Positions 44,524 to 64,000 of a DNA stretch of 64,000 bases are shown piece by piece. The position numbers and the translations under genes were made by a program. Position 1 is the stretch's first letter, and every line of letters starts with the position of its first letter. The stretch is from IMG/VR virus record IMGVR_UViG_3300042367_000228, positions 1-64,000 of that record; one strand, written 5' to 3'. Below the pieces are notes generated by a model that was given only the letters and a program-made list of their open reading frames with translations, was not told where the DNA came from and ran no database searches.

Positions 44524-44525
44524 AA

Positions 44526-48182: not shown

Positions 48183-48593
48183 CTATGAACGATTCAATAT
48201 TTGATGTTTAATTTGAGTTGACCAGTACACAGCGTGTTTACTTTCAATTCTAATATCATATTTAATAGGTTTTTCAAATATAAGGTTTGTATCGTTATAC
48301 TTACTTTGATTTATAGTGTCAACAAATACTGTAAAATCTGCATTAAATATTTTTCTAATTTCTTCAGTTGGTGCAACAAAATCACATATTACATATTTAG
48401 CGTTGGATTGTTCAGCTAATTGTTTCATTCTATTACACTGTCGCAGTCTTCCCTGATCGCTAAAATCCCAATCATTATACTGTTTTCTAATTTCATCGGC
48501 ATTAAACCATTCTAAATTTGGTAAAATTTTAATTAATTCATTTGCTAATGTTGTTTTACCTGAACCAGGTAATCCTAATATAAGTATTTTCAT
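48183..48593 (-). CDS. cysC: Adenylylsulfate (APS) kinase-like P-loop kinase
   Basis: GLPGSGKTTLA, NADEIR, WDFSDQGR, FEKP pattern; short (136 aa). Confidence 0.7.
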   Translation of the reverse strand: MKILILGLPGSGKTTLANELIKILPNLEWFNADEIRKQYNDWDFSDQGRLRQCNRMKQLAEQSNAKYVICDFVAPTEEIRKIFNADFTVFVDTINQSKYNDTNLIFEKPIKYDIRIESKHAVYWSTQIKHQILNRS

Positions 48594-49099: not shown

Positions 49100-49103
49100 A
49101 TTT

Positions 49104-51908
49104 TTACCTTTTGTATGTACTTAAATATTTAAAAAAGAAGTCTCTTTCAGTTTCTTCATCTAGCACATAAAAATCAATAACCTCGCCATTAACATTTTGA
49201 AATGCTAATTTTTCTGGTAATTTACCTTTATACGCGATATTATTGATAGCGCAATAACTATAAAAATGTTGCACTACACCTAAAGATAATCTGATAGTCC
49301 AATCATCGCCGCAATTTTTTAATTCTTTATGCCACATCTCCATTCCGCGTTCAAGCCAAGTAAAGTCAGGTTTTGGATGATCTGTTATAAATTTACTCCA
49401 ATAATCAACTAAGATATAATGTTTAGCAAAAACTCTATCTGGATATGTTCTAACATTTTTATAAATTAAATCAGAATTTCTACCTATAGATTTTCTTTTT
49501 AATAATTCATGATTAGCTAAACCATAATGTAAAATCCAAGCATAATCTTGCCAAAACATTTTACCTAAAAAATGCTCACCGTCTTTAGATGGATATTCAT
49601 GCACAACACCAGTAAATCTAATTTTACCTCGTTTAAATAATCTATCGTGCATAACATCAACATTAATACCCATTTTATGGGAATCAAGTGACATGCATTG
49701 TTTTTGTTTCAACAACATACCATCATAGTAATCGCTGGTAATATACTTAAATAAATTTTTCCAACTTTCAACTTGTTCATCAGCATCAATCCAAAAAATA
49801 TAATCTCCAGATGCTTGATCAATAGAATAATTTCTAGCTCTAGAAAAATTACCTAATCCATCTTCTTCTAACCATTCTAAATCATAAATTTTATCTGTAT
49901 ATTTTTCGGCAATTCGTTTAGTGTCATCAGTAGAACCAGTATCAACAATAATAATTTCATCTACAAATCCATTTAACGATTTTAAACAACGAGAAATATT
50001 ATCTTCTTCATTTCTAACAATCATACAAGCAGAAATAGATTTATATGGTCTAGTTTTTATCCATTTTTCATTATAATCAATTTCACCAAATTCAATATTA
50101 TCGCCTTTAGAAGAATTAAACCAAAACGAAATATTGCTACAAGGTTCGTTTCTTCTACCCACCACACTAGAAGATGAATGAATTAACGTAAAATCTACGT
50201 TTTTTAATAATTGTTTAATATCAGATCTTTCAAAATGATGAACATGATTAAGTTCTACTTTATTCATTATCATATTATCCCACGGTCCTGTTGGAGTAGT
50301 AAAATAAAATAACGTATCAAGTTGAGCTAATTTAGTTACTGTATTAAGAAATTCTTTAGTATCCTCAATATGTTCCATTACCTCACCAAGAATAACTACA
50401 TCAGGTTTAATATCATAATTCAAAATATTAAACACAGAATCACAAATAAATTTTAATTGAGGATATTTAGATTTATATCGTTTTTCAACAAAATCTAACA
50501 CAGGTTTATAAGTATCAACTAATGTCATTTCTGAAATATTAAGAGAAAATCGTGTTAGTAATGGCAATGATAATATACCATCATTACTTCCTATGTCAAC
50601 AATTTTTAATTTTTTACTAGGAGCTTTTTTAATAATATCATCAACTAAATTTATTAGATGAGTACCTCTTTCATCTAACATAAAATCTTCGTCTGAGTTA
50701 TAATCTTCTCTAACTAATACAACATTTTTATTGTAATAATCAGCATTATCTAACAATTTTCTATATTTTTCATCTCCTGTTAATTTATAAGCAGCTACTA
50801 TATCTGAATTATAAACTAACTGGTCTAAAATTTTAGATTTATATTTTTCAAATCTTTTATTAAACATAGAATCAATTTCTCTGTTCCAAGATTTGGCTAC
50901 GTTTTGCCAAGAATATTTTTCAATATCTACTCGCGCCTTATCTACAGCTTGATCATACAAATCTTTATCTTGATATTTTTTTACTAATGATAAAAATTCA
51001 TCAAAATATTCTTGTGTATCGTATTTTGATTTAACTGTAGTTTGAGATTTAACAGTTTCTGATAATGCAAAATTATGTGTAGCAATAATCATACATTCAT
51101 TATATTGAGCTTCAATAGCATTAATACAACTAATTTCAGGAAAATCTGTTGGATATAGCATGTATGCGCAATTAGAAAGTAATTCATAATATTCGCGTTT
51201 AGGTAAATTACCTATCATTTTAACATTAGTTGAATACTCTAATAATTCTTCAACCTCATTATAAATTTTTTGAACTTCTTCCGGAGTTCCTAGTGTATGC
51301 TCATATCCGCATAAATGTAATATTGCATCAGGATTAATATCTAACACTTCTGGCCATATTTTTTCAAGTAGATATTTCAATCCTCGTTCGGGTCTAGAAG
51401 CATAGATATAATTATTTTTCTTTTCTTCAAATGATTTTTTTGTTGTTATAATTGACTGATCATAACCATTAGAAGTTTTCCAAATATAATTAGTTGGTTC
51501 AATAGTATAATTGTTAACAAATAACGATTTATGATATTCACTTAAACAAAATACTCTATCTGCTACGCCCATAGCATCACGAAAATTATTAGAATCAATA
51601 TCATGACACCAAAGAACGTTAAGTTTTGAATCTAATGGAACTGCTAGAAAATCTGTAAATCTACTTACAATTACAACATCAAATTGAGAAATATCATCTG
51701 CCATATATTTTTCTAATGGTCGATACTCAACATTATCATAAATTCCAGGTTTATCGCATTTACAATAAACTGTTACTTCATGACCTAAGGCTGCAGTTTC
51801 TTTAGCCATATAGATCAAGGCTGATTCTGACCCACCTAACGCTTTTTCGTAAACTGAATTACCATTAAATTCTAATCCAGCAGTTACAAAACAAATACTT
51901 TTATTCAT
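49104..51908 (-). CDS. Tri-domain GT4 glycosyltransferase / SAM methyltransferase / GT2 glycosyltransferase
   Basis: YASRPERGL and EISCINAIEA (GT-B); VDIGSNDG and EVMEHI (MTase); ACMIVRNEE, VDTGSTD, WIDADE (GT-A). Confidence 0.88.
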   Translation of the reverse strand: MNKSICFVTAGLEFNGNSVYEKALGGSESALIYMAKETAALGHEVTVYCKCDKPGIYDNVEYRPLEKYMADDISQFDVVIVSRFTDFLAVPLDSKLNVLWCHDIDSNNFRDAMGVADRVFCLSEYHKSLFVNNYTIEPTNYIWKTSNGYDQSIITTKKSFEEKKNNYIYASRPERGLKYLLEKIWPEVLDINPDAILHLCGYEHTLGTPEEVQKIYNEVEELLEYSTNVKMIGNLPKREYYELLSNCAYMLYPTDFPEISCINAIEAQYNECMIIATHNFALSETVKSQTTVKSKYDTQEYFDEFLSLVKKYQDKDLYDQAVDKARVDIEKYSWQNVAKSWNREIDSMFNKRFEKYKSKILDQLVYNSDIVAAYKLTGDEKYRKLLDNADYYNKNVVLVREDYNSDEDFMLDERGTHLINLVDDIIKKAPSKKLKIVDIGSNDGILSLPLLTRFSLNISEMTLVDTYKPVLDFVEKRYKSKYPQLKFICDSVFNILNYDIKPDVVILGEVMEHIEDTKEFLNTVTKLAQLDTLFYFTTPTGPWDNMIMNKVELNHVHHFERSDIKQLLKNVDFTLIHSSSSVVGRRNEPCSNISFWFNSSKGDNIEFGEIDYNEKWIKTRPYKSISACMIVRNEEDNISRCLKSLNGFVDEIIIVDTGSTDDTKRIAEKYTDKIYDLEWLEEDGLGNFSRARNYSIDQASGDYIFWIDADEQVESWKNLFKYITSDYYDGMLLKQKQCMSLDSHKMGINVDVMHDRLFKRGKIRFTGVVHEYPSKDGEHFLGKMFWQDYAWILHYGLANHELLKRKSIGRNSDLIYKNVRTYPDRVFAKHYILVDYWSKFITDHPKPDFTWLERGMEMWHKELKNCGDDWTIRLSLGVVQHFYSYCAINNIAYKGKLPEKLAFQNVNGEVIDFYVLDEETERDFFFKYLSTYKR

Positions 51909-51910
51909 AA

Positions 51911-52522
51911 TTAATTTACTCTCTTATAGGCTTTTTTATGTTTAGATATAGCAAATATTTCAAATCCGCCTGTTAACATTTTATCTTCAATTTGTTGATG
52001 ATCGTAATATGGAATATCATCAAATATTATAATTCCATTCATAGAGAGTCTAGGAATAAAAAAATCTGCTTCTAGCAATACGGCATCTGTACAGTGAGGA
52101 CCGTCAATAAATACTAAAGCATAGTTGGATTCGATTGTTTTAACTTGATTATACACTGGAATACCGTCAGAATATCTAGAGAAAAATTCAGTATCTTCTA
52201 AATTAAAAAATTGAAAATTAAATCCTAAATCAGTTATATAAGAAAATAAATTAGGAATCGTTTCGTCTCTCATACGATTATTATAATCAAATTTTATAGC
52301 TAAATGCAAATCGCTAGAAGCATAATCTATATTTCCGTAAGGATCAACACAAACAAATACTCTATTAGTATCTTCAAATCGTTCTAAAGAATCTGCGATT
52401 AGTATTGCAGATCCACCTTTTCGAGTCCCTAACTCTATTATATTTCCAAAGATATTATTTTTTGAAATATATTCACAAGCATCATTTAATATTTCATAAT
52501 CTATACTATCAGTTTCAAACAT
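51911..52522 (-). CDS. Class I SAM O-methyltransferase (TylF/Methyltransf_24-like)
   Basis: IELGTRKGGS, VFIDGPH, IIFDD. Confidence 0.85.
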   Translation of the reverse strand: MFETDSIDYEILNDACEYISKNNIFGNIIELGTRKGGSAILIADSLERFEDTNRVFVCVDPYGNIDYASSDLHLAIKFDYNNRMRDETIPNLFSYITDLGFNFQFFNLEDTEFFSRYSDGIPVYNQVKTIESNYALVFIDGPHCTDAVLLEADFFIPRLSMNGIIIFDDIPYYDHQQIEDKMLTGGFEIFAISKHKKAYKRVN

Positions 52523-53885
52523 TATATTTTTCCTTTAATACAGCTTTTAGTTCGTCATATACTTCATTCCAAATTTCCGGAGTAACTTGTCTAATTAACC
52601 TTACGTTTTCTCCATACCAACTAGAATTTGGTTTACCTTCGGCCCAGACATAATATTCCATGATAGGAATTAATATAACAACTTGTTTACCTAGCGCAGC
52701 CGCTGCATGTGCAACTGAAGTACACGAAGTTATTACTAAATCTAGGTTATGGATTACACCTAGTAAATCTTCAAATGTACTTAACTCAAATTGCAAATCA
52801 ACAACTTCATTATGATTTTCTAATTGCGCTAACCCAACATCTCGTTGAATAGAATATAAACTCCAGTTATTGCCTTCTGGTAAGGAATTTATAACTTCTG
52901 TTAAATTAACGCTGCGATGTAATTCATGATCATATCTTGGATTGCCTGCCCATCGCAACCCAACTTTAAATTCTCCAGATAATTTATGTTTCTCAATATA
53001 GTCAGGTTTAGCTTGTAAATAAGGGCCGTACCATAAATCGTTAGCATCAATTCCTAATGTTTTTGGTAATGCCATCATTGGAGTCCAACAATCATAATCT
53101 TCTTTTTTATAGTCTGAAATATCAATAATTTTTTCAAATGGTAAATGATTGTAAATTGTATGCACTTTATGAGTAGTCATAATAGAAACTTTCATACCAA
53201 GATCTCTTAAATGTTTTACAAATCTAACATTAATAATCTCGTCGCCAATGCCGCCTTCACCTACCATTAATATATGTAAATTTGGTTTTGGTTTACCGTT
53301 CCATTCAGGGATATCCCAAACTTTAGAATATGATCCAAATACATTTAACTTTCTACCAATGTAAAGGTGTTCCATACCTTTTTTAAAATCTCCATCTTGA
53401 ATATAATGCACTCCAAGATTAAATAAGATCGAATCCGCTTCTCGTTGATCGTATTTCCATAAATTTTCTTCCATGGATTTAACAATATCATAAGATTCTT
53501 GTTTTTTATTACACGCAAATAATGCAGCTGAATAATCTAATAGATAGCGATCATTATCTTGAATATTATCCATAACAAATTCATAATATTCTACAGATTT
53601 AGTTGGCTTATTTGCTGACAAATAAATTTTAGCTAAATTAGACTTAATTGCTACAGTTTGTTCAATAGCTTTAGATAGCGATAATGCTTTTTCGCCATAT
53701 TCTATAGCAGTAACAAATCTTTTTGCTTTATCATAAGAATAACTATATAAATCATAACCTAAAATATCAAGAGGAACTATTTTATTTTTTTCAAATAGTT
53801 CCATTAAATTTACTATTTCGTCTAATAAATCCGATCTTGATAAAATATCAACTGTTTGCTTTACTGCATCATAATCTGTAGCCAT
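52515..53885 (-). CDS. TPR-containing GT9-like glycosyltransferase
   Basis: TPR helices, then EGGIGDEI, VGLRWAGNP, DLVITSCTSVAHAAAALGK; ATG 53885 preferred. Confidence 0.82.
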   Translation of the reverse strand: MATDYDAVKQTVDILSRSDLLDEIVNLMELFEKNKIVPLDILGYDLYSYSYDKAKRFVTAIEYGEKALSLSKAIEQTVAIKSNLAKIYLSANKPTKSVEYYEFVMDNIQDNDRYLLDYSAALFACNKKQESYDIVKSMEENLWKYDQREADSILFNLGVHYIQDGDFKKGMEHLYIGRKLNVFGSYSKVWDIPEWNGKPKPNLHILMVGEGGIGDEIINVRFVKHLRDLGMKVSIMTTHKVHTIYNHLPFEKIIDISDYKKEDYDCWTPMMALPKTLGIDANDLWYGPYLQAKPDYIEKHKLSGEFKVGLRWAGNPRYDHELHRSVNLTEVINSLPEGNNWSLYSIQRDVGLAQLENHNEVVDLQFELSTFEDLLGVIHNLDLVITSCTSVAHAAAALGKQVVILIPIMEYYVWAEGKPNSSWYGENVRLIRQVTPEIWNEVYDELKAVLKEKYNV

Positions 53886-54672
53886 TATTTTCCAATTCCA
53901 AAATAAACTCGTATTCCGATGATGATAATTTTTCTTCAGGAACACAAATAAAATTTATATCCAAAACAAAAGTTTTATAACCTAACGATTCAATTAACGT
54001 TTTTAGTTCAGTTGCACCGTTATATTGCTTATAATATTCAATATACATTAGTGGTCTGTGCTTGTTAATTGTAGCAACAGCACCATTAACTACGTCTAGT
54101 TCCATCCCTTCAACATCAACTTTAATAATAGAAATATTTTCTATATCTTTAAAGTATTCATCAATAACAATTTGATCAACAATTTCACCATTACCAAAAT
54201 CTAGATCTTGGCCAACATCATCAAATTCTCCAGTAAGACCTACACTACCAAAACTAGCCGGTTTATAATAATCTACTTTAGGTACAGTTATCGGTTTAGT
54301 AGACGATCCGACTGCAGTTTTTTCCGCATATACGTTATCTACGCTGTTTAATGCTAAGTTACCACATAGCATTTGATAGATCTGACGTTGCGGTTCAAAT
54401 GCATACACAGTTCCATTTGCTGGTAAAATTGCATCAGCAACTTGGACAGAGAACGCGCCGATGTTAGCACCAACATCAATCACTGCAGGATACTTTTTAT
54501 CCTTAAGGTAATGACGTAAGATCCACATTAATTCCATGTTTTCTGATCCCATGTTCATTAAATGATATCCAACTCCGGGAAAATTTTCTATAGGATTGTA
54601 ATCAAATCGGTTTACTATCATCATACCAAACTCAGTCGGTATTATAACATTTCTTCTTGGTTTTCCTATCAT
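53869..54672 (-). CDS. FkbM-family methyltransferase
   Basis: VIDVGANIG, YAFEPQ, IKVDVEGME. Confidence 0.92.
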   Translation of the reverse strand: MIGKPRRNVIIPTEFGMMIVNRFDYNPIENFPGVGYHLMNMGSENMELMWILRHYLKDKKYPAVIDVGANIGAFSVQVADAILPANGTVYAFEPQRQIYQMLCGNLALNSVDNVYAEKTAVGSSTKPITVPKVDYYKPASFGSVGLTGEFDDVGQDLDFGNGEIVDQIVIDEYFKDIENISIIKVDVEGMELDVVNGAVATINKHRPLMYIEYYKQYNGATELKTLIESLGYKTFVLDINFICVPEEKLSSSEYEFILELENNGYRL

Positions 54673-55448
54673 TTCATGTGCTTCCAAAAATCCATTTCTT
54701 CTAAATGGTTAAACAAATCTGGTGGAAGAATCGTTTGACGTTCTTTAAACTGAACTTTATTCCTAACATGATGTAACCCTTTAATGTTCATGTCGAAATC
54801 AAATTCATCGTAATCACCAACTACGTTATCAAAATCATGATCAAACCAAGATTCTCCAATAAATTCATAAATTTTCTTCATAACTAATTTAGGATTTTTA
54901 GCTAATTGATCATATTGGACTATCATAACATTTTCTTTCTTTGCCCCAAACAACGCTTCTTTAACTCCGTTATATGCAAACCCAACAAATGAAGATGAAT
55001 CTGTTAGATATTGCGCTCTAGAGTAAACAGAAACTCCTGCTCCGTCAGGAAATATAGACGGAACATCGTATGGATTTTTAGCAAATAAAGTTTCAAATGA
55101 ATCTATAATCCACGGAATTGATCGTATGCAAACAATAATCTTAGCGTCTGGATATAAATCAGCTAATAATGGAGTTAAATAAGTCCACCCTCGATTAGTA
55201 TCAAACACTACGTTATTTGAATCTTTATAGTAAGTTTCTGTAAGAGAATGAATTAATTCTTTGCGTTTTTCTGGTGGGCATTGGAATCTATATCCGCCCT
55301 GTGATTGACTTTCTTGAATAATAGCTCGTGTAAATCTAGCAAGCGGACCAGAAATACTTGCTCCAAAATTTGGATTTTGATTTAAAATGGAAGAAAGAAG
55401 GGTTGTTCCAGAACGGGGCAACCCTGAGATAAAATGAATTTTTTGCAT
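54669..55448 (-). CDS. Sulfotransferase
   Basis: 5'-PSB loop SGLPRSGTTLL; CIRS motif. Confidence 0.9.
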   Translation of the reverse strand: MQKIHFISGLPRSGTTLLSSILNQNPNFGASISGPLARFTRAIIQESQSQGGYRFQCPPEKRKELIHSLTETYYKDSNNVVFDTNRGWTYLTPLLADLYPDAKIIVCIRSIPWIIDSFETLFAKNPYDVPSIFPDGAGVSVYSRAQYLTDSSSFVGFAYNGVKEALFGAKKENVMIVQYDQLAKNPKLVMKKIYEFIGESWFDHDFDNVVGDYDEFDFDMNIKGLHHVRNKVQFKERQTILPPDLFNHLEEMDFWKHMK

Positions 55449-55511: not shown

Positions 55512-56144
55512 TTATTTTTTTTCTAAATCATATTCACGCAATTCAACTGTTGTTTGAATAGCGTCAATTTCAGCAGTTTTTGTAGATTCCCAATTAAAAC
55601 AATTTTGGATATGCGCCATTATAGAATTAACAATTAATTGTAAATCAGTTTTGTTAATTACAAAAAAACCTTCTGGAAATTTCCATTCAGCAGAGTAATC
55701 ATCATTGGTTAATAATAATGCTTGAGAATACATTACTCTAGTTTCTCTATCAGTATACAGAGTTAACATTTTTCCATTAATATCTCGCGTAATTGGCGTT
55801 GTTTCTTTAACCCAGCGTAAATTTGCTAATAATGATTTTAAATTAACTTTTATAGATTCTATAGGAAATTCTTGTGCGTAAAATTCTGCTATGTGATTAT
55901 TAGATTCATCATAATAGAATCTTGGTCCAGCTATTTGATCAAATATTGTATTAAGTTCTGTTGGATTAACAATTTGCGTTGGAACCAATTTTAACGATTC
56001 ATTAAAAATTAATGGTTCGCTTGGCGGATGTTCTATAGTAACTTGTTGGTGTAATTCTTCAGAAACAAAGTGTTCAAAATATGCTTGATGCCAATCTCTT
56101 GGACCTGTTATTATATTTTCGTTTTTTAATAATGTGTATGCCAT
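55512..56144 (-). CDS. Fibre-associated accessory protein (DUF4376-like C-terminus)
   Basis: LYTDRETRVMY...WK...HIQNCFNWE pattern. Confidence 0.6.
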   Translation of the reverse strand: MAYTLLKNENIITGPRDWHQAYFEHFVSEELHQQVTIEHPPSEPLIFNESLKLVPTQIVNPTELNTIFDQIAGPRFYYDESNNHIAEFYAQEFPIESIKVNLKSLLANLRWVKETTPITRDINGKMLTLYTDRETRVMYSQALLLTNDDYSAEWKFPEGFFVINKTDLQLIVNSIMAHIQNCFNWESTKTAEIDAIQTTVELREYDLEKK

Positions 56145-56152
56145 TTTTAACC

Positions 56153-57283
56153 TTATACTATTTGTAATCCCATTGTCGAATAAATTCCACCAGTAACGTT
56201 ACTCCAGTTACTTAAAGTTCCGACTTGCATTGGGCTTGATCTATTGGTTGTATCCAATAATCCTAATCGACCTTGAGCATTTAAACCCCAAGTCCATAAT
56301 GTTCCGTCTGTTTTTACTGCTGCTGTATGAAATTGCCCGCAAGAAATTTTACTCCAGTTGGATAGAGTCCCAACTTGCGTTGGGCTTGATCTATGAGTTA
56401 AATCTCCTAATCCCAATTGACCAAACGTATTATTTCCCCAAGTCCACAATGTTCCGTCTGTCTTAATCGCTGCTGCAAAAAAACTTCCAGAAGAACTCGA
56501 AACTTTACTCCAGTTAGATAGAGTCCCAATTTGCACTGGGCTTGATCTATGAGTTAAATCTCCTAATCCCAATTGACCCAAACTATTACCACCACAAGTC
56601 CATAATGTTCCATCTGTTTTTACTGCTACTATGTGATTTTGTCCAGCAGAAATTTTACTCCAGTTGGATAGAGTTCCAACTTGTACTGGGCTTGATCTAT
56701 TGGTTACATCGGCTCCTAATTGGCCAAGACCATTTAAACCCCAAGTCCATAATGTTCCATTTGTTTTTACTGCTGCTGTATAATATTGCCCACAACTAAC
56801 TTGACTCCAGTTAGATAGAGCACCAACTTGTATTGGGGTACTTTTATTGGCTGTATCGCCTAATCCTAATTGACCATAAGTAGCACTATTTCCCCAAGCC
56901 CATAATGTTCCGTCTGTTTTAATTGCTGCTATATGATTCCATCCAGCACTAACTTGACTCCAATTAGATGCAGGTACAACTTGATTTGGGCTACTTTTAT
57001 TGGTTGTATCAGTTAATCCTAGTACAAGATAAATATTAAATCCCCAAGTCCATAATGTTCCGTCTGTTTTAATAGCCGCTGCAGAATGATTTCCGATAGA
57101 AATTTGACTCCAGTTAGATAGAGTCCCAATTTGCACTGGGCTTGATCTATTGGTTATATCAGATAATCCTAATTCTCCATATGTTTGGCCAAACCCCCAA
57201 GCATACATATTCCCAGTTGTCTTAAACATAGCCGTGGACATATATCTTGTTTGTAATTTTGTTCCAGTTACTTTATAAGTCAT
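56153..57283 (-). CDS. RCC1/BLIP-II repeat beta-propeller protein (7 blades)
   Basis: Seven ~52-aa repeats HxAAIKTDGTLWTWGxNxxGQLG...SSPVQVG. Confidence 0.93.
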   Translation of the reverse strand: MTYKVTGTKLQTRYMSTAMFKTTGNMYAWGFGQTYGELGLSDITNRSSPVQIGTLSNWSQISIGNHSAAAIKTDGTLWTWGFNIYLVLGLTDTTNKSSPNQVVPASNWSQVSAGWNHIAAIKTDGTLWAWGNSATYGQLGLGDTANKSTPIQVGALSNWSQVSCGQYYTAAVKTNGTLWTWGLNGLGQLGADVTNRSSPVQVGTLSNWSKISAGQNHIVAVKTDGTLWTCGGNSLGQLGLGDLTHRSSPVQIGTLSNWSKVSSSSGSFFAAAIKTDGTLWTWGNNTFGQLGLGDLTHRSSPTQVGTLSNWSKISCGQFHTAAVKTDGTLWTWGLNAQGRLGLLDTTNRSSPMQVGTLSNWSNVTGGIYSTMGLQIV

Positions 57284-60216
57284 AATAGTGAAGCCAAAGT
57301 TGTATTATCCATTGCATAAACGCTAACGTATGTATTTAGCGTTCCGACTTGTACAGGGCTACTTGTATTAGTATAATTTTCCTGACCTAATTGACCAGAA
57401 CTATTTAAACCCCACGCCCAAAGAGTTCCATCCGTTTTTATGGCAACAGAATGATAGTTACTTGCTGCAATTTTGCTCCAATTAGATAAATTACCAATTT
57501 GCGTTATACTTGAACGATGAGTTACATCTCCTAACCCTAATTGACCATAACTATTATTACCTATAGACCAAAGAGTTCCATTAGTTTTTAAAAATAATCC
57601 ATGTGTTAATCCAGCAACAACTTTAGACCAACCAGTATCTAACGATATTTGAATAGGAGAGTAAACATTACTAGAAAGTCTACCTAATTGTCCATAAGCA
57701 TTATTACCCCAAGTCCATAATGTTCTGTCTGTCTGAATAGATCCTGTATAATAAGCTCCAGCAAAAATTTGATTCCAGTTACTTAACGATCCAACTTGTA
57801 CTGGGCTTGATCTATTGGTTACATCGTCTCCTAATTGACCTTGAACATTATAACCCCAAGTCCATAATGTTCCGTCTGTTTTTATCGCTGTTGTATGACG
57901 ATATCCGCAAGCAATTTTACTCCAGTTACTTAAAGCTCCGACTTGTACTGGACTACTTCTATTTGTTGTATTAGATAATCCTAGTTGACCCCAATTATTT
58001 AAACCCCAAGTCCATAATGTTCCGTCTGTCTTGATCGATGCTATATGCGCAAGTCCAGCGGCAACTTGACTCCAATTAGATAAACTACCAACCTGAACTG
58101 GACTTGATCTATCGACAAATGAATCTGATATTCCTAAATAACCATTAACGTTACTACCCCAAGCCCATAATGTTCCATCTGTCTTGATCGATACTGTAAG
58201 ATATCCTCCAGACGAAATTTGACTCCAATTCGATAAAGTTCCAACTTGCGTTGGGCTTGATCTATTCGTTATATTCGATAACAGTCCTAATTGGCCTTGA
58301 CCATTATAACCCCAAGTCCATAATGTATTATCTGTTTTAATTGCTGCTGTATGATAATATCCACAAGCAACTTGACTCCAGTTAGATAACAACCCAACTT
58401 GTACTGGGCTAGATCTATGGGGTACATCAGATAATCCTAATTGACCATAACTATTATTTCCCCAAGCCCATAATGTATTATCTGTTTTAATAGATGCTGT
58501 ATGATAATATCCACAAGCAACTTGACTCCAGTTAGATAGAGTTCCAACTTGTACTGGGCTTGATCTATTGGATGTATCGAATGATCCTAATTGACCAAAA
58601 CTATTACCACCCCAAGTCCATAATGTTCCATTTGTTTTTACTGCTGCTGTATGATGATATCCACAAGAAAACTTAGTATTAGTTGTAACATCATATAAAC
58701 CTGGATACGAAGGTAATACAACTTTTTGAACAACAGGATTAATACCAACTTGACCAAAACTAGTTAACCCCCAACTCCAAAGCGTAGTATCTGGTTTAAT
58801 ATAATAGCCAAATCTATCACCGAACGATGCTTCTATTGCAGAGTCTATTACAACTGGCAAAGCAATAACAGTTCCGTTTGATGACGAATTAACGTAAGTT
58901 GGATATAGCGACAAGTAATCCAAATAAGATTTTGTAGTTAGCAAATAATCTGCATTATTGCCGAATGCATACAAATTACCATCAGAATTGATAGCAGCAC
59001 CCCAAGCAGTATTTTGAGTTCCTGTTGGAAATTTATTCCAACTAGAAGATGATACTTGATTAATATTAGAACGATATGAAATATCAGAATACCCTAATTG
59101 ACCTTGATTATTTAAACCCCAAGCCCATATTGCTCCGTTTGAATTAATCGCTACTGTATGAGACGCTCCACCAGAAATTTTACTCCAGTTACTTAAAGTT
59201 CCAACTTGTACTGGGCTTAATCTAGCAGCAGTATCTGATAATCCTAATTGACCATAATTATTTTGACCCCAAGACCATAATGTTCCATCTGTTTTAATTG
59301 CTAATGTATTATACCGCGCGACAAAAACGTTACCCCAATTTGATAGCGCACCAACTTGTACTGGGCTACTTCTATCAGGTATATTGTTTAATCCTAATTG
59401 ACCATAATTATTTTTACCCCAAGACCATAATGTTCCATCTGTTTTAATTGCTAATGTATCGCCATATCCACAAGAAACTTTACTCCAATTTGATAGCGCA
59501 CCAACTTGTACTGGGCTATATCTATCTGTTGTATTAGATAATCCTAATTGACCATTACCATTCCAACCCCAAGACCATAATGTTCCGTCTGTCTTGATTG
59601 CCGTTACATGGGCGTAAAAGCCAGAAATTTGACTCCAATTGGATAGAGAGCCAACTTGTACTGGACTATATCTATTCGTTATATCAGAGAACCCTAATTG
59701 ACCATAAACATCATTACGACCCCAAGTCCATAATGTTCCATCTGTCTTGATCGCTGCGTTATATTCATACCCGCTAATAATTTGGCTCCAGTTGGATAAA
59801 GTTCCAACTTGTACTGGGCTATATCTATCAGTTGTATCAGATAATCCTAATTGACCATAAAAATTATAACCCCAAGTCCATAATGTTCCATCTGTTTTAA
59901 TCGCTGCTGTATGATCATATCCGCTACAAACTTTACTCCAGTTACTTAAAGTTCCAACTTGTACTGGGCTTGATCTATTGACTTGATCGGATAATCCTAA
60001 TTGACGAAAACTATTTAAACCCCAAGTCCATAATGTTCCATCTGTTTTAATCGCCGCTGAATGATTTTCTGCGCAAGAAACTTGACTCCAATTTGTAACG
60101 CTTAAAGGGGTCGGAACTGAAGGCAAAAACCGATAATTTCTACCAACTTCCCAAAGAGTGCTATCGTTTTTTATTATATAATTTGAATTATTTTTTATAC
60201 CGTAATATTGAGTCAT
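57280..60216 (-). CDS. RCC1/BLIP-II repeat protein (~19 blades)
   Basis: Same repeat, counted by eye. Confidence 0.93.
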   Translation of the reverse strand: MTQYYGIKNNSNYIIKNDSTLWEVGRNYRFLPSVPTPLSVTNWSQVSCAENHSAAIKTDGTLWTWGLNSFRQLGLSDQVNRSSPVQVGTLSNWSKVCSGYDHTAAIKTDGTLWTWGYNFYGQLGLSDTTDRYSPVQVGTLSNWSQIISGYEYNAAIKTDGTLWTWGRNDVYGQLGFSDITNRYSPVQVGSLSNWSQISGFYAHVTAIKTDGTLWSWGWNGNGQLGLSNTTDRYSPVQVGALSNWSKVSCGYGDTLAIKTDGTLWSWGKNNYGQLGLNNIPDRSSPVQVGALSNWGNVFVARYNTLAIKTDGTLWSWGQNNYGQLGLSDTAARLSPVQVGTLSNWSKISGGASHTVAINSNGAIWAWGLNNQGQLGYSDISYRSNINQVSSSSWNKFPTGTQNTAWGAAINSDGNLYAFGNNADYLLTTKSYLDYLSLYPTYVNSSSNGTVIALPVVIDSAIEASFGDRFGYYIKPDTTLWSWGLTSFGQVGINPVVQKVVLPSYPGLYDVTTNTKFSCGYHHTAAVKTNGTLWTWGGNSFGQLGSFDTSNRSSPVQVGTLSNWSQVACGYYHTASIKTDNTLWAWGNNSYGQLGLSDVPHRSSPVQVGLLSNWSQVACGYYHTAAIKTDNTLWTWGYNGQGQLGLLSNITNRSSPTQVGTLSNWSQISSGGYLTVSIKTDGTLWAWGSNVNGYLGISDSFVDRSSPVQVGSLSNWSQVAAGLAHIASIKTDGTLWTWGLNNWGQLGLSNTTNRSSPVQVGALSNWSKIACGYRHTTAIKTDGTLWTWGYNVQGQLGDDVTNRSSPVQVGSLSNWNQIFAGAYYTGSIQTDRTLWTWGNNAYGQLGRLSSNVYSPIQISLDTGWSKVVAGLTHGLFLKTNGTLWSIGNNSYGQLGLGDVTHRSSITQIGNLSNWSKIAASNYHSVAIKTDGTLWAWGLNSSGQLGQENYTNTSSPVQVGTLNTYVSVYAMDNTTLASLL

Positions 60217-61665
60217 TTATACTCCATAAACTGCTTTTGTAGGAAAAGGTACTGTATCAAACAATCCTAATTGACCTAGATTATTATAACCACAAGTCCA
60301 TAATGTTCCGTCTGTTTTGATCGATGCTGTATGAATATTTCCGCAAACAACTTGACTCCAGTTACTTAAAGTCCCAACTTGCGTCGGGCTAAGTCTCTGC
60401 GTTAAATCAGATAACCCTAGTTGACAGTTACTATTGGCACCCCAAGTCCATAATGTCCCGTCTGTTTTGATCGCTGCTGTATGATACTGACCGCAAGAAA
60501 CTTTACTCCAGTTAGATAAAGTTCCGACTTGTACTGGACTCAATCTATTAGCTGTATCAGATAATCCTAAGTTACCAAAAAAATTATAACCACAAGTCCA
60601 TAATGTTCCGTCTGTTTTTATTGCTGCTGTATGATGCCGTCCGCTAGCAACTTGACTCCAGTCGGATAGCGTACCGACTTGTACTGGGCTTGATCTATTA
60701 ACTGCGTTAGCTAACCCTAATTGACCGCTAGAATTCTGCCCCCAACTCCATAATGTTCCGTCTGTTTTAATCGCTGTTGTATAATATCTCCCACCAGAAA
60801 CTTGACTCCAGCTGGATAGCGTGCCAACTTGTACTGGACTCGATCTATTCGTTAAATCAGATAATCCTAATTGACCTTGATCATTTGCACCCCAGGACCA
60901 TAATGTTCCATTTGTTTTGATCGCTGCTACATAATGCTGACCGCAAGCAACTTGGTTCCAGTCGGATAGCGTACCAACTTGCGTTGGTCTTAATCTATTT
61001 GTTAAATCAGATAATCCTAATTGACCATAACCATTATAACCGCAAGTCCATAATGTTCCGTCTGTTCTAATTGCTGCTGTATGTTGAACTCCACCAGCAA
61101 CTCGGTTCCAGTTGGATAGCGTACCAACTTGTACTGGGCTTGATCTATTAACTGCGTCAGATAACCCTAATTGGCCAGAAACGTTATAACCCCAAGTCCA
61201 TAATGTTCCGTTTGTCTTAATCGATGCTGTATGAGACTCTGCTCGAGAGATTTTACTCCAGTTAGATAAAGTCCCAACTTGTATCATAATAGATTTAGAT
61301 GTAGTAATAGCTTGCGCCCACGCAGCAGTTTGTGGAGTATTTTCTAAAGCACCGAAGGCTCCCCGAATATACGTTTGTGAAGTATTAGCTCTATTGGAAA
61401 ATATTATTGCGCTTGGTAATACAGCAACTATATCAGCAAAATTATCTAAATCAAGTTTTGGAAGATTTAATACTGCATTACCAGCATTAAATGCATTACC
61501 TACATTTAACGCGTAATATCCAGAAGAACTAATATTATTTTGACCAAATACAACAGTTTTTCTACTAGAAATATTTAACGTTTCTATTGGAAAATAATTT
61601 ATATCATTTGCATTAATATAAGTATAATCTAAATCAACAGAATTTAGTTTATAATTAGAACTCAT
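60217..61665 (-). CDS. RCC1/BLIP-II repeat protein (~7 blades) with unique N-terminus
   Basis: Same repeat; starts MSSNYKLNSVDLD. Confidence 0.93.
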   Translation of the reverse strand: MSSNYKLNSVDLDYTYINANDINYFPIETLNISSRKTVVFGQNNISSSGYYALNVGNAFNAGNAVLNLPKLDLDNFADIVAVLPSAIIFSNRANTSQTYIRGAFGALENTPQTAAWAQAITTSKSIMIQVGTLSNWSKISRAESHTASIKTNGTLWTWGYNVSGQLGLSDAVNRSSPVQVGTLSNWNRVAGGVQHTAAIRTDGTLWTCGYNGYGQLGLSDLTNRLRPTQVGTLSDWNQVACGQHYVAAIKTNGTLWSWGANDQGQLGLSDLTNRSSPVQVGTLSSWSQVSGGRYYTTAIKTDGTLWSWGQNSSGQLGLANAVNRSSPVQVGTLSDWSQVASGRHHTAAIKTDGTLWTCGYNFFGNLGLSDTANRLSPVQVGTLSNWSKVSCGQYHTAAIKTDGTLWTWGANSNCQLGLSDLTQRLSPTQVGTLSNWSQVVCGNIHTASIKTDGTLWTCGYNNLGQLGLFDTVPFPTKAVYGV

Positions 61666-63998
61666 TTAAATATCACTCCTGCTGAATAATTTTTAACTTC
61701 TACTTTAACAGCAGTATTTATCAATCCAATTCTAACTGGGCTACTTTTATTTGCTGTATCTCCTGTTCCTAATGCGCCATATTGATTATTACCTAATGCC
61801 CATATACTTCCATCTGTTTTTGTAAATAAAGTTGAATCTAAATTTGTAGAAACTGAATTCCAAGTATCTCCAGTAACTGATTTTTTTACTATGTTAGTAT
61901 AAATTGTATAATCACCTAAGTTGCCAGAAGTATTCATACCCCAAGTCCATAATGTCCCGTCTGTTTTGATCGATGCTGTATGATATTGGCCACCGGCAAC
62001 TTGACTCCAGTTAGATAGCGTGCCAACTTGTACTGGACTTGATCTATTTGTTTGATCAGATAATCCTAATGTACCGTATTGATTATTACCCCAAATCCAT
62101 AATGCGCCTGCCGAATTAATCGCTGCTGTATAATAATAGCCACCGGAAATCTGACTCCAGTTAGATAGCGTGCCAACTTGTACTGGGCTCAATCTATCGG
62201 TTGTATCAGATAATCCTAATTGACCACTATTGTTGGACCCCCAAACCCATAACGTTCCGTCTGTTTTAATCGCTGCTGTATGCCTCCACCCGCAAGCAAC
62301 TTTACTCCAGTTAGATAACGCGCCAACTTGTACTGGACTATATCTATGAGTTTGATTAGATAACCCTAGTTGGCCATTAGAATTTAAACCCCAAGACCAT
62401 AATGTTCCATCCGTTTTAATCGATGTCATATTATAATACCCGCAAGCAATTTTACTCCAGTTTGATAGCGCACCAACTTGTACTGGGCTCGATCTATCGG
62501 TTGTATCAGATAATCCTAAGCAACCATAACCGTTATACCCCCAAGACCATAATGTTCCATCTGTCTTGAGTGCTGCTTTGTATTGGCCTATCCCAGCAAC
62601 TTGACTCCAGTTAGATGCAGTACCAACTTGCGTTGGGCTTGATCTATGAGTTAAATCTCCTAATCCTAATGCACCATAAATACTGTTCCGACCCCAACTC
62701 CATAATGTTCCGTCTGTCTTAACAGATACTGTATGATCATATCCAGCAACAATTTGACTCCAGTTACTTAAAGCTCCAACTTGTACTGGGCTTGATCTAG
62801 TTGCAGTATCCCCTAATCCTAATTGTCCGGAACTATTTAAACCGCAGGACCACAACGTTCCATCTGCCTTGATTGCTGCTGTATGTTGATATCCACCACA
62901 AGCAACTTTACTCCAGTTAGATGCAGTTCCAACTTGTACTGGGCTATATTTATGGGCTTGTCCATCCGGAAAATAGCTCGTATTATATCTACCAGCTTCC
63001 CATATATCATTAGTTGTATTGACTATCCATATGTTAGTATCATCCATACTAGCAGTAGATATTGATATACTGCCTATTTGTACCGGACTACTTCTATGAG
63101 TTTGATCTGATAATCCTAGCTGACCATAATCGTTTTTACCAAATACATATCCACCGTAACTATTATCTACTAACATTGCTCCATAATCTGAACAATACAC
63201 TTTAGTCCAATCGCTACGAGTTCCAATTTGAACTAAACTTGAACGATAAGTTGTATCTGATATGCCTAATTGACCATAAGAATTATTACCTACAGACCAA
63301 GCTGTACCGTTAGTTTTAATTCCAACAAAATGATTTCTACCAACATCAAATGTATTCCAAGTAGATGTATAATCGCTCCAAGGTATATCTAACAATAAAC
63401 CTTCCGGATATATATTACTGTTAACATCTAAACAAAAAATATCATTATTACTTGCGGCAATTTGTTTGTATGCTCTAGAAGTTGCTTTAATAGGGAAAGT
63501 TGAAATTGGAATATAATTAATTCCTAATTGACCCCAACTATTATTACCCCAAGTCCATAATGTATTATCTGTCTTAAGTGCTGCTGTATGATAAATTCCG
63601 CAAGCAACTTTACTCCAGTTACTTAAAGTTCCAACTTGTACTGGACTTGATCTATGAGTTAAATCAGATAACCCTAATTGTCCGGCAGAATTTAAACCCC
63701 AAGTCCATAATGTACTATCTGTTTTAATTGCTGCTGTTTGATAATATCCGCAAGCAACTTGACTCCAGTTTGATAGCGCACCAACTTGTACTGGGCTCGA
63801 TCTATCGGTTGTATTAGATAATCCTAGTTGACCTCGATTATTAAAACCCCAAGTCCATAATGTCCCGTCTGTCTTAATTGCTGCTGTATGATAGGGTCCG
63901 GCAGCAACTTTACTCCAGTTACTTAAAGCTCCAACTTGTACTGGGCTATATCTATCTGTTATATTAGATAATCCTAATTGACCACTATTGTTGGACCC
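61662..63998 (-). CDS. RCC1/BLIP-II repeat protein, 5'-truncated by the window edge (at least 15 blades)
   Basis: The frame of the 61662-63395 ORF stays open, with further repeats, up to 63998; the TTG at 63395 is internal. Confidence 0.9.
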   Translation of the reverse strand, partial: GSNNSGQLGLSNITDRYSPVQVGALSNWSKVAAGPYHTAAIKTDGTLWTWGFNNRGQLGLSNTTDRSSPVQVGALSNWSQVACGYYQTAAIKTDSTLWTWGLNSAGQLGLSDLTHRSSPVQVGTLSNWSKVACGIYHTAALKTDNTLWTWGNNSWGQLGINYIPISTFPIKATSRAYKQIAASNNDIFCLDVNSNIYPEGLLLDIPWSDYTSTWNTFDVGRNHFVGIKTNGTAWSVGNNSYGQLGISDTTYRSSLVQIGTRSDWTKVYCSDYGAMLVDNSYGGYVFGKNDYGQLGLSDQTHRSSPVQIGSISISTASMDDTNIWIVNTTNDIWEAGRYNTSYFPDGQAHKYSPVQVGTASNWSKVACGGYQHTAAIKADGTLWSCGLNSSGQLGLGDTATRSSPVQVGALSNWSQIVAGYDHTVSVKTDGTLWSWGRNSIYGALGLGDLTHRSSPTQVGTASNWSQVAGIGQYKAALKTDGTLWSWGYNGYGCLGLSDTTDRSSPVQVGALSNWSKIACGYYNMTSIKTDGTLWSWGLNSNGQLGLSNQTHRYSPVQVGALSNWSKVACGWRHTAAIKTDGTLWVWGSNNSGQLGLSDTTDRLSPVQVGTLSNWSQISGGYYYTAAINSAGALWIWGNNQYGTLGLSDQTNRSSPVQVGTLSNWSQVAGGQYHTASIKTDGTLWTWGMNTSGNLGDYTIYTNIVKKSVTGDTWNSVSTNLDSTLFTKTDGSIWALGNNQYGALGTGDTANKSSPVRIGLINTAVKVEVKNYSAGVIFK

Positions 63999-64000
63999 CC

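What the first reader, a model, noticed from the sequence alone, without database searches (positions are those of the whole stretch)
56153..64000. Array of more than 40 RCC1/BLIP-II blades: fixed scaffold, hypervariable surface positions
At least four translationally coupled genes are built from a ~156-bp unit still highly similar at DNA level within and between genes. For example, TGGGCTTGATCTATGAGTTAAATCTCCTAATCC recurs near 56375, 56540 and 62635. Framework residues are nearly invariant, while positions after WG and around the xG-xx-H turn vary freely, rich in Y/N/S/G/W/F. Blade counts (7, ~19, ~7, at least 15) are not all multiples of 7, and homogenised blocks sit among divergent blades. 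Inference: a recombination-shuffled binder library, like natural DARPins, for host recognition or anti-defence. No RT is present, so it is not a DGR within this window.
Basis: partly seen in the sequence, partly recalled or inferred. Interest (0 to 1): 0.65.

Follow-up and report, generated by a model that had tools for sequence, protein, structure and literature searches.

The report
Phage tail-module RCC1 propeller gene array
A 372-kb lake phage carries four back-to-back genes, set among its tail-fibre genes, that encode about 54 copies of a 50-residue RCC1 beta-propeller blade; the blades keep a fixed scaffold while their loops are reshuffled by recombination, which makes them likely host-binding modules of a kind already annotated in many phages.

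Summary
There are four minus-strand genes: 56153-57283, 57280-60216, 60217-61665 and 61662-64829 (the last runs past the window). They encode 7, 19, 7 and 21 RCC1 blades. The period is 150 bp, not 156. Mean blade DNA identity is 72%.

The g1 model is a confident 7-blade propeller, closest to UVR8, HERC2 and RCC1. Variable columns (8, 10, 11, 19, 41, 42) align with UVR8 interface residues, which points to one face. The same scaffold/variable pattern appears in thousands of COG5184 homologues, so it is a family trait.

A sister phage has the same architecture. Its flanking genes are 94-100% identical, but its RCC1 genes are only 64-74% identical. Two near-identical strains differ at 5 sites in 21 kb, all in the array. 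Three of these form a 20-nt tract whose exact donor is another blade. This supports blade-to-blade gene conversion plus allelic recombination.

The complete genome has no RT, invertase or integrase. It has one RecA/UvsX-like gene.

The array is not a fast diversity generator: it is base-for-base identical in several independent assemblies.

Context points to a virion-borne binding role (unproven): tail-fibre genes on both sides, fusions to tail-fibre chaperone domains, and phAPEC6 virion proteomics.

New member of a known kind.

The parts
56153..57283 (-). g1: 376-aa protein, a single 7-blade RCC1-like propeller
   Evidence: PF25390 at 2.9e-110 and 7 PF00415 stretches. The AF2 model has pLDDT 93 and pTM 0.89. 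Foldseek finds UVR8, HERC2, RPGR and RCC1 at TM 0.84-0.88.
57280..60216 (-). g2: 978-aa protein with 19 blades in two propeller bodies, joined by a low-confidence linker (residues 397-468)
   Evidence: The AF2 model has pLDDT 73 and pTM 0.46. VIA-align matches residues 17-411 and 459-830 to 7-blade RCC1-like domains, with Z 30-33 but rmsd 5-7 A.
60217..61665 (-). g3: 482-aa protein with a unique N-terminal domain of about 120 aa, followed by one 7-blade propeller
   Evidence: The N-terminal domain has no usable match. It is 89-97% identical in the sister phage.
61662..64000 (-). g4: 1055-aa protein with 21 blades (3 x 7). The gene continues beyond the window, to genome position 64829.
55512..56144 (-). 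Small DUF4376 protein (tail-fibre family) immediately downstream of the array
   Evidence: PF14301 at 1.7e-10. phrog_10508 'tail fiber protein' at 8.8e-12.
48183..55448 (-). Glycan-modification cluster in the same operon direction. It comprises an APS-kinase-like gene, a GT1/methyltransferase/GT2 fusion, a TylF-like methyltransferase, a TPR + GT9-like glycosyltransferase, an FkbM methyltransferase and a sulfotransferase.
   Evidence: Cyanophage S-SRM01 has an equivalent neighbourhood beside its RCC1 genes.
44526..48152 (-). 1208-aa tail fibre protein downstream of the cluster
   Evidence: phrog_18345 and phrog_9942 'tail fiber protein'.
13628..14716 (-). RecA/UvsX-like recombinase, the only recombinase family found in the genome
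   Evidence: PF00154 at 1.9e-16, mapping to 13877-14665. No Resolvase, Phage_integrase or RVT_1 match.
56381..56413 (.). It covers three variable codons.
62454..62506 (.). Exact 53-nt tract shared with 63762-63814, between two g4 blades that are otherwise diverged. It is an example of a conversion-like patch.
57294..57593 (-). The last two, atypical, blades of g2. They are 98-99% identical in the sister phage, whereas no other blade scoring at least 1.45 bits per residue exceeds 88%.

Best explanation
The region is an operon segment of four translationally coupled genes, in the tail-fibre module of a complete 372-kb jumbo myophage from lake metagenomes. Together the genes encode six or seven RCC1-like beta-propellers (about 54 blades of 50 residues).

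Shown:
- The repeats and the fold.
- The position of the variable residues in two loops.
- The gene neighbourhood.
- The pattern of divergence.

Inferred function: the propellers are virion-associated, fibre-linked adhesion modules. They contact host surface structures through one face, which is formed by the loop after the W-x-W-G strand and by the G-x-x-H turn.

Inferred evolutionary mechanism: loop variants are reassorted by short ectopic gene conversion between blades, and by homologous recombination between alleles of co-circulating phages. This uses ordinary homologous recombination (the phage has a UvsX/RecA-like gene). No reverse transcriptase or site-specific recombinase is involved. 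The process acts on an evolutionary time scale, and each allele is stable across samples.
For: Fold:
- The g1 model has pLDDT 93 and matches UVR8, HERC2, RPGR and RCC1 at TM 0.84-0.88.
- BLIP-II matches at Z 19.

Variable face:
- The variable columns lie in the s1-s2 loop and the s3-s4 turn, which are alternate loops and so lie on the same side.
- In the HMMER alignment, columns 41/42 align with the W/R of the UVR8 GWRHT motifs, and columns 8, 10 and 11 align with UVR8 W198/R200/Y201. Placing those residues at the UVR8 dimer interface is published knowledge recalled from memory, not checked here.

Gene context:
- Upstream are a Peptidase_S74-chaperone tail fibre and further fibres. Downstream is a DUF4376 tail-fibre-family gene.
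- Homologues P0188 and P0217 fuse about four RCC1 propellers to a C-terminal S74 chaperone.
- In S-SRM01 and phiCD211 the RCC1 genes sit directly after tail-fibre genes.
- BFVD lists RCC1-like propellers in proteins annotated as tail fibres, in Pseudomonas phages Littlefix and PollyC.
- phAPEC6 RCC1-like proteins were detected in virions by mass spectrometry (PMC7247149).

Hot spot of divergence:
- In the sister phage, flanking genes are 94-100% identical in amino acids, while the RCC1 genes are 64-74% identical with the same lengths.
- dS is 0.40-0.49 in the array against 0-0.31 in the flanks.

Conversion:
- All 5 differences between L011 and L013 lie in the array (P about 0.011).
- Three of them lie within 20 nt, and the variant 30-mer has an exact donor 1.6 kb away in the same gene.
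- Exact tracts of 44-59 nt are shared between diverged blades.
- The run-length permutation test gives P=0.005.
- Orthologue difference tracks pool heterozygosity (r=0.95, slope 0.93), and this also holds at synonymous sites (r=0.88).
- Atypical blades keep positional orthology better than typical ones (0.845 against 0.751, P=0.009).
Against: - There is no direct evidence that these proteins are in the virion or bind anything.
- They lack the N-terminal motif shared by the neighbouring fibre genes, and no anchor domain was recognised.
- Propellers are monomeric folds, unlike trimeric fibres.
- Omega at the variable columns is only 1.3-1.4 with biased column choice. Relaxed constraint would therefore fit as well as diversifying selection.
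- The same variable columns are variable across the whole family.
- Some non-repeat parts are also 13-17% diverged, for example the g2 linker.
- Most variant clusters of the L093 allele have no donor in the G000 or L011 arrays: 3 of 15 were found, against 0.18 expected by chance. Allelic exchange from an unsampled pool must therefore contribute.
- The run-length test is inflated by the clustering of conserved sites.
- The one-face claim was not checked on coordinates.
Confidence: 0.55

Rival explanations
1. The propellers are structural decoration or spacer modules (whiskers, fibre scaffolds) with no specific ligand. Their loop variation is neutral drift at unconstrained surface positions, and gene conversion merely reflects the repetitive DNA.
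For: - Omega at the variable columns is close to 1 (1.3-1.4).
- The same columns are unconstrained across thousands of homologues.
- phAPEC6 carries unexplained 'hairy' appendages together with RCC1-like virion proteins.
Against: - The variable columns are strongly enriched in Tyr, Ser and Asn: 23% Tyr against 5% in the flanking genes. That is typical of binding surfaces rather than random loops.
- The array is the most diverged segment between two otherwise near-identical phages, together with the adjacent fibre gene. This is the usual behaviour of host-range determinants.
Confidence: 0.2
2. The divergence pattern is produced only by exchange of whole allelic segments between phage lineages, that is, classical tail-fibre mosaicism with breakpoints in conserved blocks. 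There is no conversion between blades of one genome.
For: - The identity profile is block-like, with blocks at 97-99%, 83-92% and 68-81%.
- dS forms a gradient in the flanks.
- The L093 allele has a sharp breakpoint near 58424, and most of its variants have no donor in the same array.
- The L091 variant differs downstream.
Against: - The L011/L013 three-site tract has an exact intragenic donor.
- Exact tracts of 44-59 nt occur between paralogous blades within one genome.
- In L093, the same variant 15-mer appears in two adjacent blades.
- Atypical blades are significantly better conserved than typical ones.
Confidence: 0.15
3. The proteins are intracellular or ejected effectors (host takeover, anti-defence, or DNA organisation as proposed for phAPEC6), and are not adhesins.
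For: - RCC1-like domains are general protein-protein interaction platforms.
- The phAPEC6 authors speculated about DNA condensation.
- PHROGs files the families under nucleotide metabolism, by name only.
Against: - The array sits inside a run of tail-fibre genes and is translationally coupled to one.
- Homologues are fused to tail-fibre chaperone domains or to T7-fibre N-terminal domains.
- The 'chromosome condensation' label is a name transferred from eukaryotic RCC1.
Confidence: 0.08
4. The array is a programmed diversity generator (a DGR, or an invertase-driven shufflon), or an artefact of assembling repeats.
For: The superficial resemblance of a fixed scaffold with variable positions.
Against: - The complete DTR-bounded genome has no RVT_1, Resolvase or Phage_integrase match.
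- All blades are in one orientation.
- The array is identical over 8,677 bp in independent assemblies, and the sister allele is reproduced with 0-5 differences in several others.
- The longest exact repeat is 59 nt.
Confidence: 0.02

Closest known systems
Bacterial/phage COG5184 'alpha-tubulin suppressor-like RCC1 family' proteins (Pfam PF00415, PF13540, PF25390)
   Same: - They share the 50-residue consensus (L-W-x-W-G-x-N-x-x-G-Q-L-G ... S-S-P-V-Q-V-G ... W ... G-x-x-H ... A-I-K-T-D-G).
- They are 45-58% identical to g1 and g2.
- Thousands of homologues were found, including proteins of 1100-1700 aa with several propellers.
- The variable columns are the same.
   Different: - Here, four such genes with about 54 blades stand in tandem inside a phage tail-fibre module.
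- Many homologues carry Ig-like, fn3 or LamG domains that are absent here.
RCC1-like 'DNA condensation protein' gene arrays of Rak2-like jumbo phages (phAPEC6, GAP32)
   Same: - These are jumbo myophages with multiple paralogous RCC1-like genes of about 40 kDa. phAPEC6 has eleven.
- Several were detected in the virion proteome (PMC7247149).
- The GAP32 protein matches at TM 0.71.
   Different: - Sequence identity is only about 20%.
- The phAPEC6 genes are mostly of single-propeller size (30-42 kDa) and are numbered at both ends of the gene list (gp003-010, gp549, gp551).
- Their authors proposed a DNA-organising role.
- No analysis of their evolution has been reported.
RCC1 genes next to tail fibres in Synechococcus phage S-SRM01 and Clostridioides phage phiCD211
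   Same: - S-SRM01 has the order: tail fibre distal subunit, then RCC1, RCC1, a TPR protein, further genes, RCC1, a sulfotransferase and a glycosyltransferase. This is the closest named relative, at 44-50% identity.
- phiCD211 has a 1759-aa RCC1 protein between tail-fibre genes.
   Different: - In S-SRM01 the RCC1 genes are single propellers interspersed with other genes.
- These are different phage lineages: a T4-like cyanophage and a C. difficile phage.
- No function was found reported for these genes. The S-SRM01 paper does not mention them, and the phiCD211 literature search returned nothing.
UVR8, eukaryotic RCC1/HERC2/RPGR RCC1-like domains, and BLIP-II
   Same: - All are seven-blade propellers (TM 0.84-0.88; BLIP-II Z 19).
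- The G-x-x-H-T turn aligns with the UVR8 GWRHT motif.
- All use one face for protein binding.
   Different: - There is no evidence here of Ran-GEF, photoreceptor or beta-lactamase-inhibitor activity.
- Identity is 24-31%.
- The proteins here contain several propellers.
Diversity-generating retroelements acting on phage tail fibres (the BPP-1 Mtd paradigm)
   Same: A fixed scaffold with variable surface residues in a host-recognition module.
   Different: - There is no reverse transcriptase anywhere in the genome.
- Variation is reassorted by homologous recombination on an evolutionary time scale, not by mutagenic retrohoming in each generation. The array is invariant across samples.

Membership tests
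RCC1-like repeat / RCC1-like domain (PF00415, PF25390) | Tandem units of about 50 residues that score above the Pfam gathering thresholds | tested here: met
   There are 50 genomic matches, of which 46 are individually over the cut-off. PF25390 scores run from 3.8e-96 to 5.7e-220 for the four proteins.
RCC1-like repeat / RCC1-like domain (PF00415, PF25390) | Closed seven-blade beta-propeller fold | tested here: met
   For g1, the model has pLDDT 93 and matches UVR8, HERC2, RPGR and RCC1 at TM 0.84-0.88. For g2 the result is inconclusive: pTM 0.46, 19 blades, and rmsd 5-7 A to 7-blade templates.
RCC1 proper (Ran guanine-nucleotide exchange factor) | GEF activity and chromatin binding | not testable with these tools
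   Not expected in a phage of bacteria. The name is inherited from the repeat.
BLIP-II | Seven-blade propeller that binds class A beta-lactamases through one face | tested here: inconclusive
   There is a fold match: Z 19, 26-32% identity over 238-247 residues. Binding activity is not testable. BLIP-II blades are shorter (the chain is about 270 residues for 7 blades).
Diversity-generating retroelement | A reverse transcriptase encoded by the element | tested here: not met
   No RVT_1 match in the complete genome. The control genomes gave matches.
Diversity-generating retroelement | A template/variable repeat pair that differs at adenines only | not tested
   No formal test was run. Codon tables show changes of all base types among blades.
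Invertase-driven tail-fibre switching (Gin/Cin/Min, shufflons) | A serine or tyrosine site-specific recombinase, with inverted segments | tested here: not met
   No Resolvase or Phage_integrase match in the genome. All blades are in one orientation.
Phage tail fibre / receptor-binding protein | Encoded within the tail or baseplate module | tested here: met
   An S74-chaperone fibre and further fibre genes lie upstream. A DUF4376 tail-fibre-family gene and a 1208-aa fibre lie downstream. The tail sheath gene is at 28210-31656.
Phage tail fibre / receptor-binding protein | A recognisable N-terminal attachment domain, or a trimeric fibre or chaperone domain, in the same protein | tested here: not met
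   No such domain is present in g1-g4. It is present only in homologues (P0188, P0217, PollyC protein).
Phage tail fibre / receptor-binding protein | Presence in the virion and binding to a host receptor | not testable with these tools
   There is only indirect evidence: phAPEC6 RCC1-like proteins were found in the virion by mass spectrometry.

The most novel reading that the evidence does not exclude
The array is an RT-independent combinatorial system for host recognition. About 50 interchangeable blade cassettes spread over four coupled genes are continually re-patterned by short gene conversion, comparable to conversion-based antigenic variation or lamprey VLR assembly but on an evolutionary time scale. 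Each phage lineage therefore displays a different set of six or seven propeller binding faces. In addition, the propellers may be substrates of the adjacent TPR-glycosyltransferase/sulfotransferase cluster: 36 of 44 blades carry an N-W-S/T sequon, against 31% in homologues. That would make them glycosylated virion adhesins.
Probability: 0.25. Interest if true: 0.7.

Novelty: new member of a known kind. Interest (0 to 1): 0.45.

Why it matters
RCC1-like genes are annotated in many large phages as 'regulator of chromosome condensation' or 'DNA condensation protein', without a tested function.

This locus gives a clear comparative case that they belong to the host-recognition module. They are the fastest-diverging part of the module, and their diversity is reassorted by blade-to-blade gene conversion rather than by a dedicated mutator.

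If the binding role is confirmed, the consensus-like scaffold with six to twelve free loop positions per blade would be a natural propeller-based binder platform. It would also be a marker for host-range regions in uncultured jumbo phages.

The recurrent linkage with sulfotransferase and glycosyltransferase genes, in two unrelated phage lineages, points to a possible role of glycan modification in adsorption.

Tried and rejected
- **Metagenome scan.** A scan with the g3 N-terminal domain found no relatives.
- **Scan with the DUF4376 gene.** The viral-contig scan returned only the sister-phage contigs already in hand.
- **Atlas search of the g3 N-terminal domain.** No usable hit; all TM values were below 0.4.
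- **Cluster look-up.** g1 forms a 90% cluster of one sequence seen on 9 contigs. The other seven proteins were not found by exact look-up.
- **Higher-order repeat.** Identity at blade offsets 7 and 14 is not raised (0.70 and 0.68, against 0.72 overall). There is therefore no trace of duplication of whole propellers.
- **Within-gene homogenisation.** Rejected: identity within genes equals identity between genes (0.718 in both).
- **Simple permutation of whole blades between the two phages.** Rejected: apart from the two conserved C-terminal blades of g2 (98%), the best cross-matches are at most 88%.
- **k-mer sharing test.** L011 20-mers occur at ectopic sites (18%) more often than at positional sites (2.9%). 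This was judged uninformative because scaffold stretches dominate.
- **Typicality versus orthologue identity.** The Spearman correlation between blade typicality and orthologue identity is 0.03. Only the two-class comparison is significant.
- **Clean contrast of unique and repeat sequence.** This does not hold. Non-canonical codons have dS 0.31 against 0.49 for canonical codons, and the g2 linker is 13-17% diverged.
- **Promoter/terminator scan.** No enrichment over shuffled sequence.
- **tRNA scan of the window.** None found.
- **PMC12906663.** It matched 'RCC1' only through culture-collection strain numbers.
- **Searches not run.** The search of protein representatives and complex prediction were not used. 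Relatives are abundant, and no binding claim is made.
- **Operator cautions.** No other genetic code was needed.

Full report
**1. What is there**

The window is the first 64 kb of a 372,016-bp virus record with direct terminal repeats, rated complete. Its GC content is about 35%.

Four minus-strand ORFs lie between 56153 and 64829:
- g1, 56153-57283, 376 aa
- g2, 57280-60216, 978 aa
- g3, 60217-61665, 482 aa
- g4, 61662-64829, 1055 aa, which runs 829 bp past the window

All 50 PF00415 matches of the genome fall in this stretch. The four proteins score 3.8e-96 to 5.7e-220 against the RCC1-like domain model PF25390.

A blade HMM built from 25 clean units finds 7, 19, 8 and 21 units. The 8 hits in g3 are 7 blades plus a split closing blade. 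The total is about 54 blades.

Other checks on the description:
- The unit is 50 residues (150 bp), not 156 bp.
- The gene junctions are TAATG, ATGA, TAA-ATG and ATGA.
- There is no excess of promoter-like or terminator-like sites.

**2. Scaffold and variable positions**

Forty full-length blades were aligned.
- Twenty-eight columns have less than 1 bit of entropy.
- Columns 8, 10, 11, 17, 19, 21, 38, 39 and 41-44 are variable. The extremes are columns 8, 10, 11, 41 and 42, at 2.6-3.1 bits.
- The six most variable columns are 23% Tyr, 11% Ser and 10% Asn. Tyr makes up 5% of the flanking genes.

Synonymous codon choice is column-specific: GGA at column 1, GGT at columns 7 and 12, GGA at column 15. 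The DNA similarity therefore reflects shared descent or homogenisation, not codon bias alone.

Pairwise statistics among blades:
- Mean pairwise DNA identity is 71.8%, equal within and between genes, with a maximum of 86%.
- Mean dS is about 0.6.
- Scaffold dN is about 0.10.
- Variable-column dN is about 0.84. That gives omega of about 1.4, but the columns were chosen for being variable.

The same x-positions appear in the consensus of 65 unrelated single-propeller homologues and 24 multi-propeller homologues. The pattern is a trait of the COG5184 RCC1 family.

**3. Fold and face**

The g1 model is confident (pLDDT 93, pTM 0.89). It superposes on UVR8, HERC2 RLDs, RPGR and RCC1 at TM 0.84-0.88.

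Each unit reads as follows:
- strand, columns 3-7
- long loop, columns 8-23
- strand, columns 24-29
- loop, columns 30-33
- strand, columns 34-39
- turn, columns 40-42
- strand, columns 43-48
- turn, columns 49-2

The variable columns lie in the first and third connections. In an antiparallel sheet these point to the same side. The second and fourth connections are conserved.

In the HMMER alignment to UVR8:
- Columns 41/42 fall on the W and R of the three GWRHT motifs.
- Columns 8, 10 and 11 fall on W198, R200 and Y201.

From published UVR8 structures, cited from memory, these residues form the dimer and partner-binding face. I could not verify the face on coordinates, because the tools do not expose them.

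The g2 model is weaker (pLDDT 73, pTM 0.46). It shows two propeller bodies, at about residues 17-411 and 459-830 with three further blades, joined by a disordered linker at 397-468. Whether its 19 blades close as 7-blade rings with extra blades left over, or as larger rings, remains open.

**4. Neighbourhood**

Upstream of g4:
- a 382-aa fibre with a Peptidase_S74 intramolecular chaperone domain, whose stop codon overlaps the g4 start
- a small gene
- three further fibre-like genes; the 382-aa fibre and two of these three share an N-terminal motif

Downstream of g1:
- a DUF4376 protein of a PHROG tail-fibre family
- a sulfotransferase, an FkbM methyltransferase, a TPR + GT9-like glycosyltransferase, a TylF-like methyltransferase, a GT1/methyltransferase/GT2 fusion and an APS-kinase-like gene
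- a 1208-aa tail fibre

The tail sheath gene (28210-31656) is closest to those of Atu_ph07, Phosso and PA5oct, at 44-46% identity.

**5. Relatives**

Single-propeller and multi-propeller homologues at 40-58% identity number in the thousands in metagenomes. They are mostly labelled 'alpha-tubulin suppressor-like RCC1 family protein'.

- P0188 and P0217 join about four propellers to a C-terminal S74 chaperone domain.
- BFVD contains RCC1-like propellers in a 'tail fiber protein' of Pseudomonas phage Littlefix, and in a protein of phage PollyC that carries a T7 tail-fibre N-terminal domain. It also contains 'DNA condensation proteins' of GAP32-like jumbo phages.
- The closest named phage is the freshwater cyanophage S-SRM01. 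There, RCC1 genes directly follow the distal tail-fibre gene and are interleaved with a TPR protein, a sulfotransferase and a glycosyltransferase.
- phiCD211 has a 1759-aa RCC1 protein between tail-fibre genes.
- phAPEC6 encodes eleven RCC1-like proteins, and six were found in purified virions by mass spectrometry. Its authors suggested a DNA-organising role (PMC7247149).

**6. Population and sister-phage comparison**

- *Stability of the G000 allele.* The complete array is identical, with 0 mismatches in 8,677 bp, in three other metagenome assemblies. It is also identical in three partial assemblies. The g1 protein is the only member of its 90% cluster and occurs on 9 contigs. The array is therefore neither mis-assembled nor rapidly varying.
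- *Sister phage.* A sister phage (L011-L014, L015, L095-L100) is collinear over 15.1 kb, with gene lengths 1059, 483, 978 and 374 aa. Its flanking genes are 94-100% identical in protein, while its RCC1 genes are 64-74% identical. dS is 0-0.31 in the flanks and 0.40-0.49 in the array. Omega is 0.45-0.56.
- *Identity profile.* The profile along the array is block-like. Blocks at 97-99% identity are the g4 start, the central atypical blades of g4, the g4 end with the g3 N-terminal domain, and the last two atypical blades of g2. Blocks at 83-92% include the g2 linker. Runs of typical blades are at 68-81%.
- *Positional orthology.* Apart from the last two blades of g2 (98%), no blade is more than 88% identical to its positional counterpart. 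Positional pairs average 76.5% identity, against 72.3% for non-positional pairs. Only 4 of 39 blades have their positional partner as best match.
- *Typical versus atypical blades.* Atypical blades (score below 1.45 bits per residue) keep orthology better than the rest (0.845 against 0.751, P=0.009).
- *Per-site pattern.* The frequency of orthologue differences equals the heterozygosity of the blade pool (r=0.95, slope 0.93). At synonymous third positions r=0.88 and the slope is 0.84.
- *Variable columns.* Columns 8, 10, 11, 19, 41 and 42 differ in 70-86% of orthologous pairs.

**7. Direct traces of conversion**

- L011 and L013 differ at 5 of 21,449 positions. All five lie in the array, which occupies 40% of the locus (P about 0.011).
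- Three of the five lie within 20 nt. The variant 30-mer is present exactly in another blade of the same gene, 1.6 kb away.
- Within G000, exact tracts of 59, 53, 53, 45 and 44 nt join blades that are otherwise about 72% identical. These tracts include variable codons.
- A run-length permutation test gives P=0.005. It is inflated by the clustering of conserved sites.
- A third allele, L093, is identical to G000 from g1 up to about 58424. It has about 62 mismatches in the next 520 bp, a sharp breakpoint inside g2. Only 3 of its 15 variant clusters have a donor in the known arrays (expected 0.18), so exchange with unsampled alleles also occurs.

The genome has no RVT_1, Resolvase or Phage_integrase gene. 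It has one RecA/UvsX-like gene, at 13628-14716.

**8. Interpretation**

- *Shown:* an array of RCC1-like propeller genes inside a tail-fibre module. It has a family-typical scaffold with variable loops. It is the fastest-diverging part of the module between close relatives. It carries signatures of blade-to-blade conversion and of allelic recombination. Each allele is stable across samples.
- *Inferred:* the proteins are virion-borne and bind host surface structures through the variable face. Loop diversity is kept by selection.
- *Not shown:* virion location, a ligand, a mode of attachment to the fibres, or positive selection free of bias from conversion.

It is not a within-population library, and the kind of protein is already widely annotated. 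I therefore rate it as a new member of a known kind, of moderate interest.

**9. Limits**

- Read-level data could not be obtained.
- Only two main alleles and two partial variants were available.
- dN/dS values are distorted by conversion.
- Face assignment rests on topology and homology.
- The UVR8 interface residues are cited from memory of the published structures.

Noticed in passing
window 48183-55448: A cluster of glycan-modification genes sits between two sets of tail-fibre genes. It comprises an APS-kinase-like gene, a GT1/methyltransferase/GT2 fusion, two methyltransferases, a TPR + GT9-like glycosyltransferase and a sulfotransferase. In cyanophage S-SRM01, a TPR protein, a sulfotransferase and a glycosyltransferase are likewise interleaved with RCC1 genes next to the tail fibre. 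The cluster may modify virion proteins or the host surface.
   Followed up: partly
window 56153-64000 (blade columns 33-35): An N-W-S/T sequon is present in 36 of 44 blades. The pooled figure in 175 homologous proteins is 31%, and only 5 of these reach 80%. Together with the adjacent TPR-glycosyltransferase, this raises the untested idea that the propellers are glycosylated.
   Followed up: partly
genome 64829-72734 (beyond the window; L009 3830-11735): Three of the four fibre-like genes upstream share a conserved N-terminal motif (..N-Q-I-P-T-N-x-D-L-G..). Their distal parts differ: an S74 chaperone, a PHROG tail-protein repeat and YadA-head repeats. This looks like several fibres that use one attachment site. 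The RCC1 proteins lack the motif.
   Followed up: no
L091 (sample 3300044633) against window 50402-53475: This is a variant of the same phage. Its g1 is identical, but it has a diverged TPR-glycosyltransferase region and no 203-aa TylF-like methyltransferase gene. Recombination therefore also remodels the glycan-modification cluster.
   Followed up: partly
L011 1-6410 against window 44508-47718: In the sister phage, the region upstream of the shared fibre C-terminus has no counterpart in G000's upstream fibre genes. Instead it contains pieces that are 88-95% identical to G000 46936-47718 and 44508-44879, part of the 1208-aa fibre gene. This indicates rearrangement of fibre modules between the two phages.
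   Followed up: no
L093 1-520 (window 58400-58920): In this allele the same variant 15-mer, which changes A-C to S-A at columns 38-39, appears in two adjacent blades. Another variant cluster equals the sequence of the neighbouring blade. This suggests local homogenisation between adjacent blades.
   Followed up: partly
window 9113-11695 and 3204-4613: An 860-aa helicase-like ORF also hits PHROG terminase-large-subunit families. A DnaB-like helicase lies nearby. These are replication genes at the start of the record and are not related to the finding.
   Followed up: no
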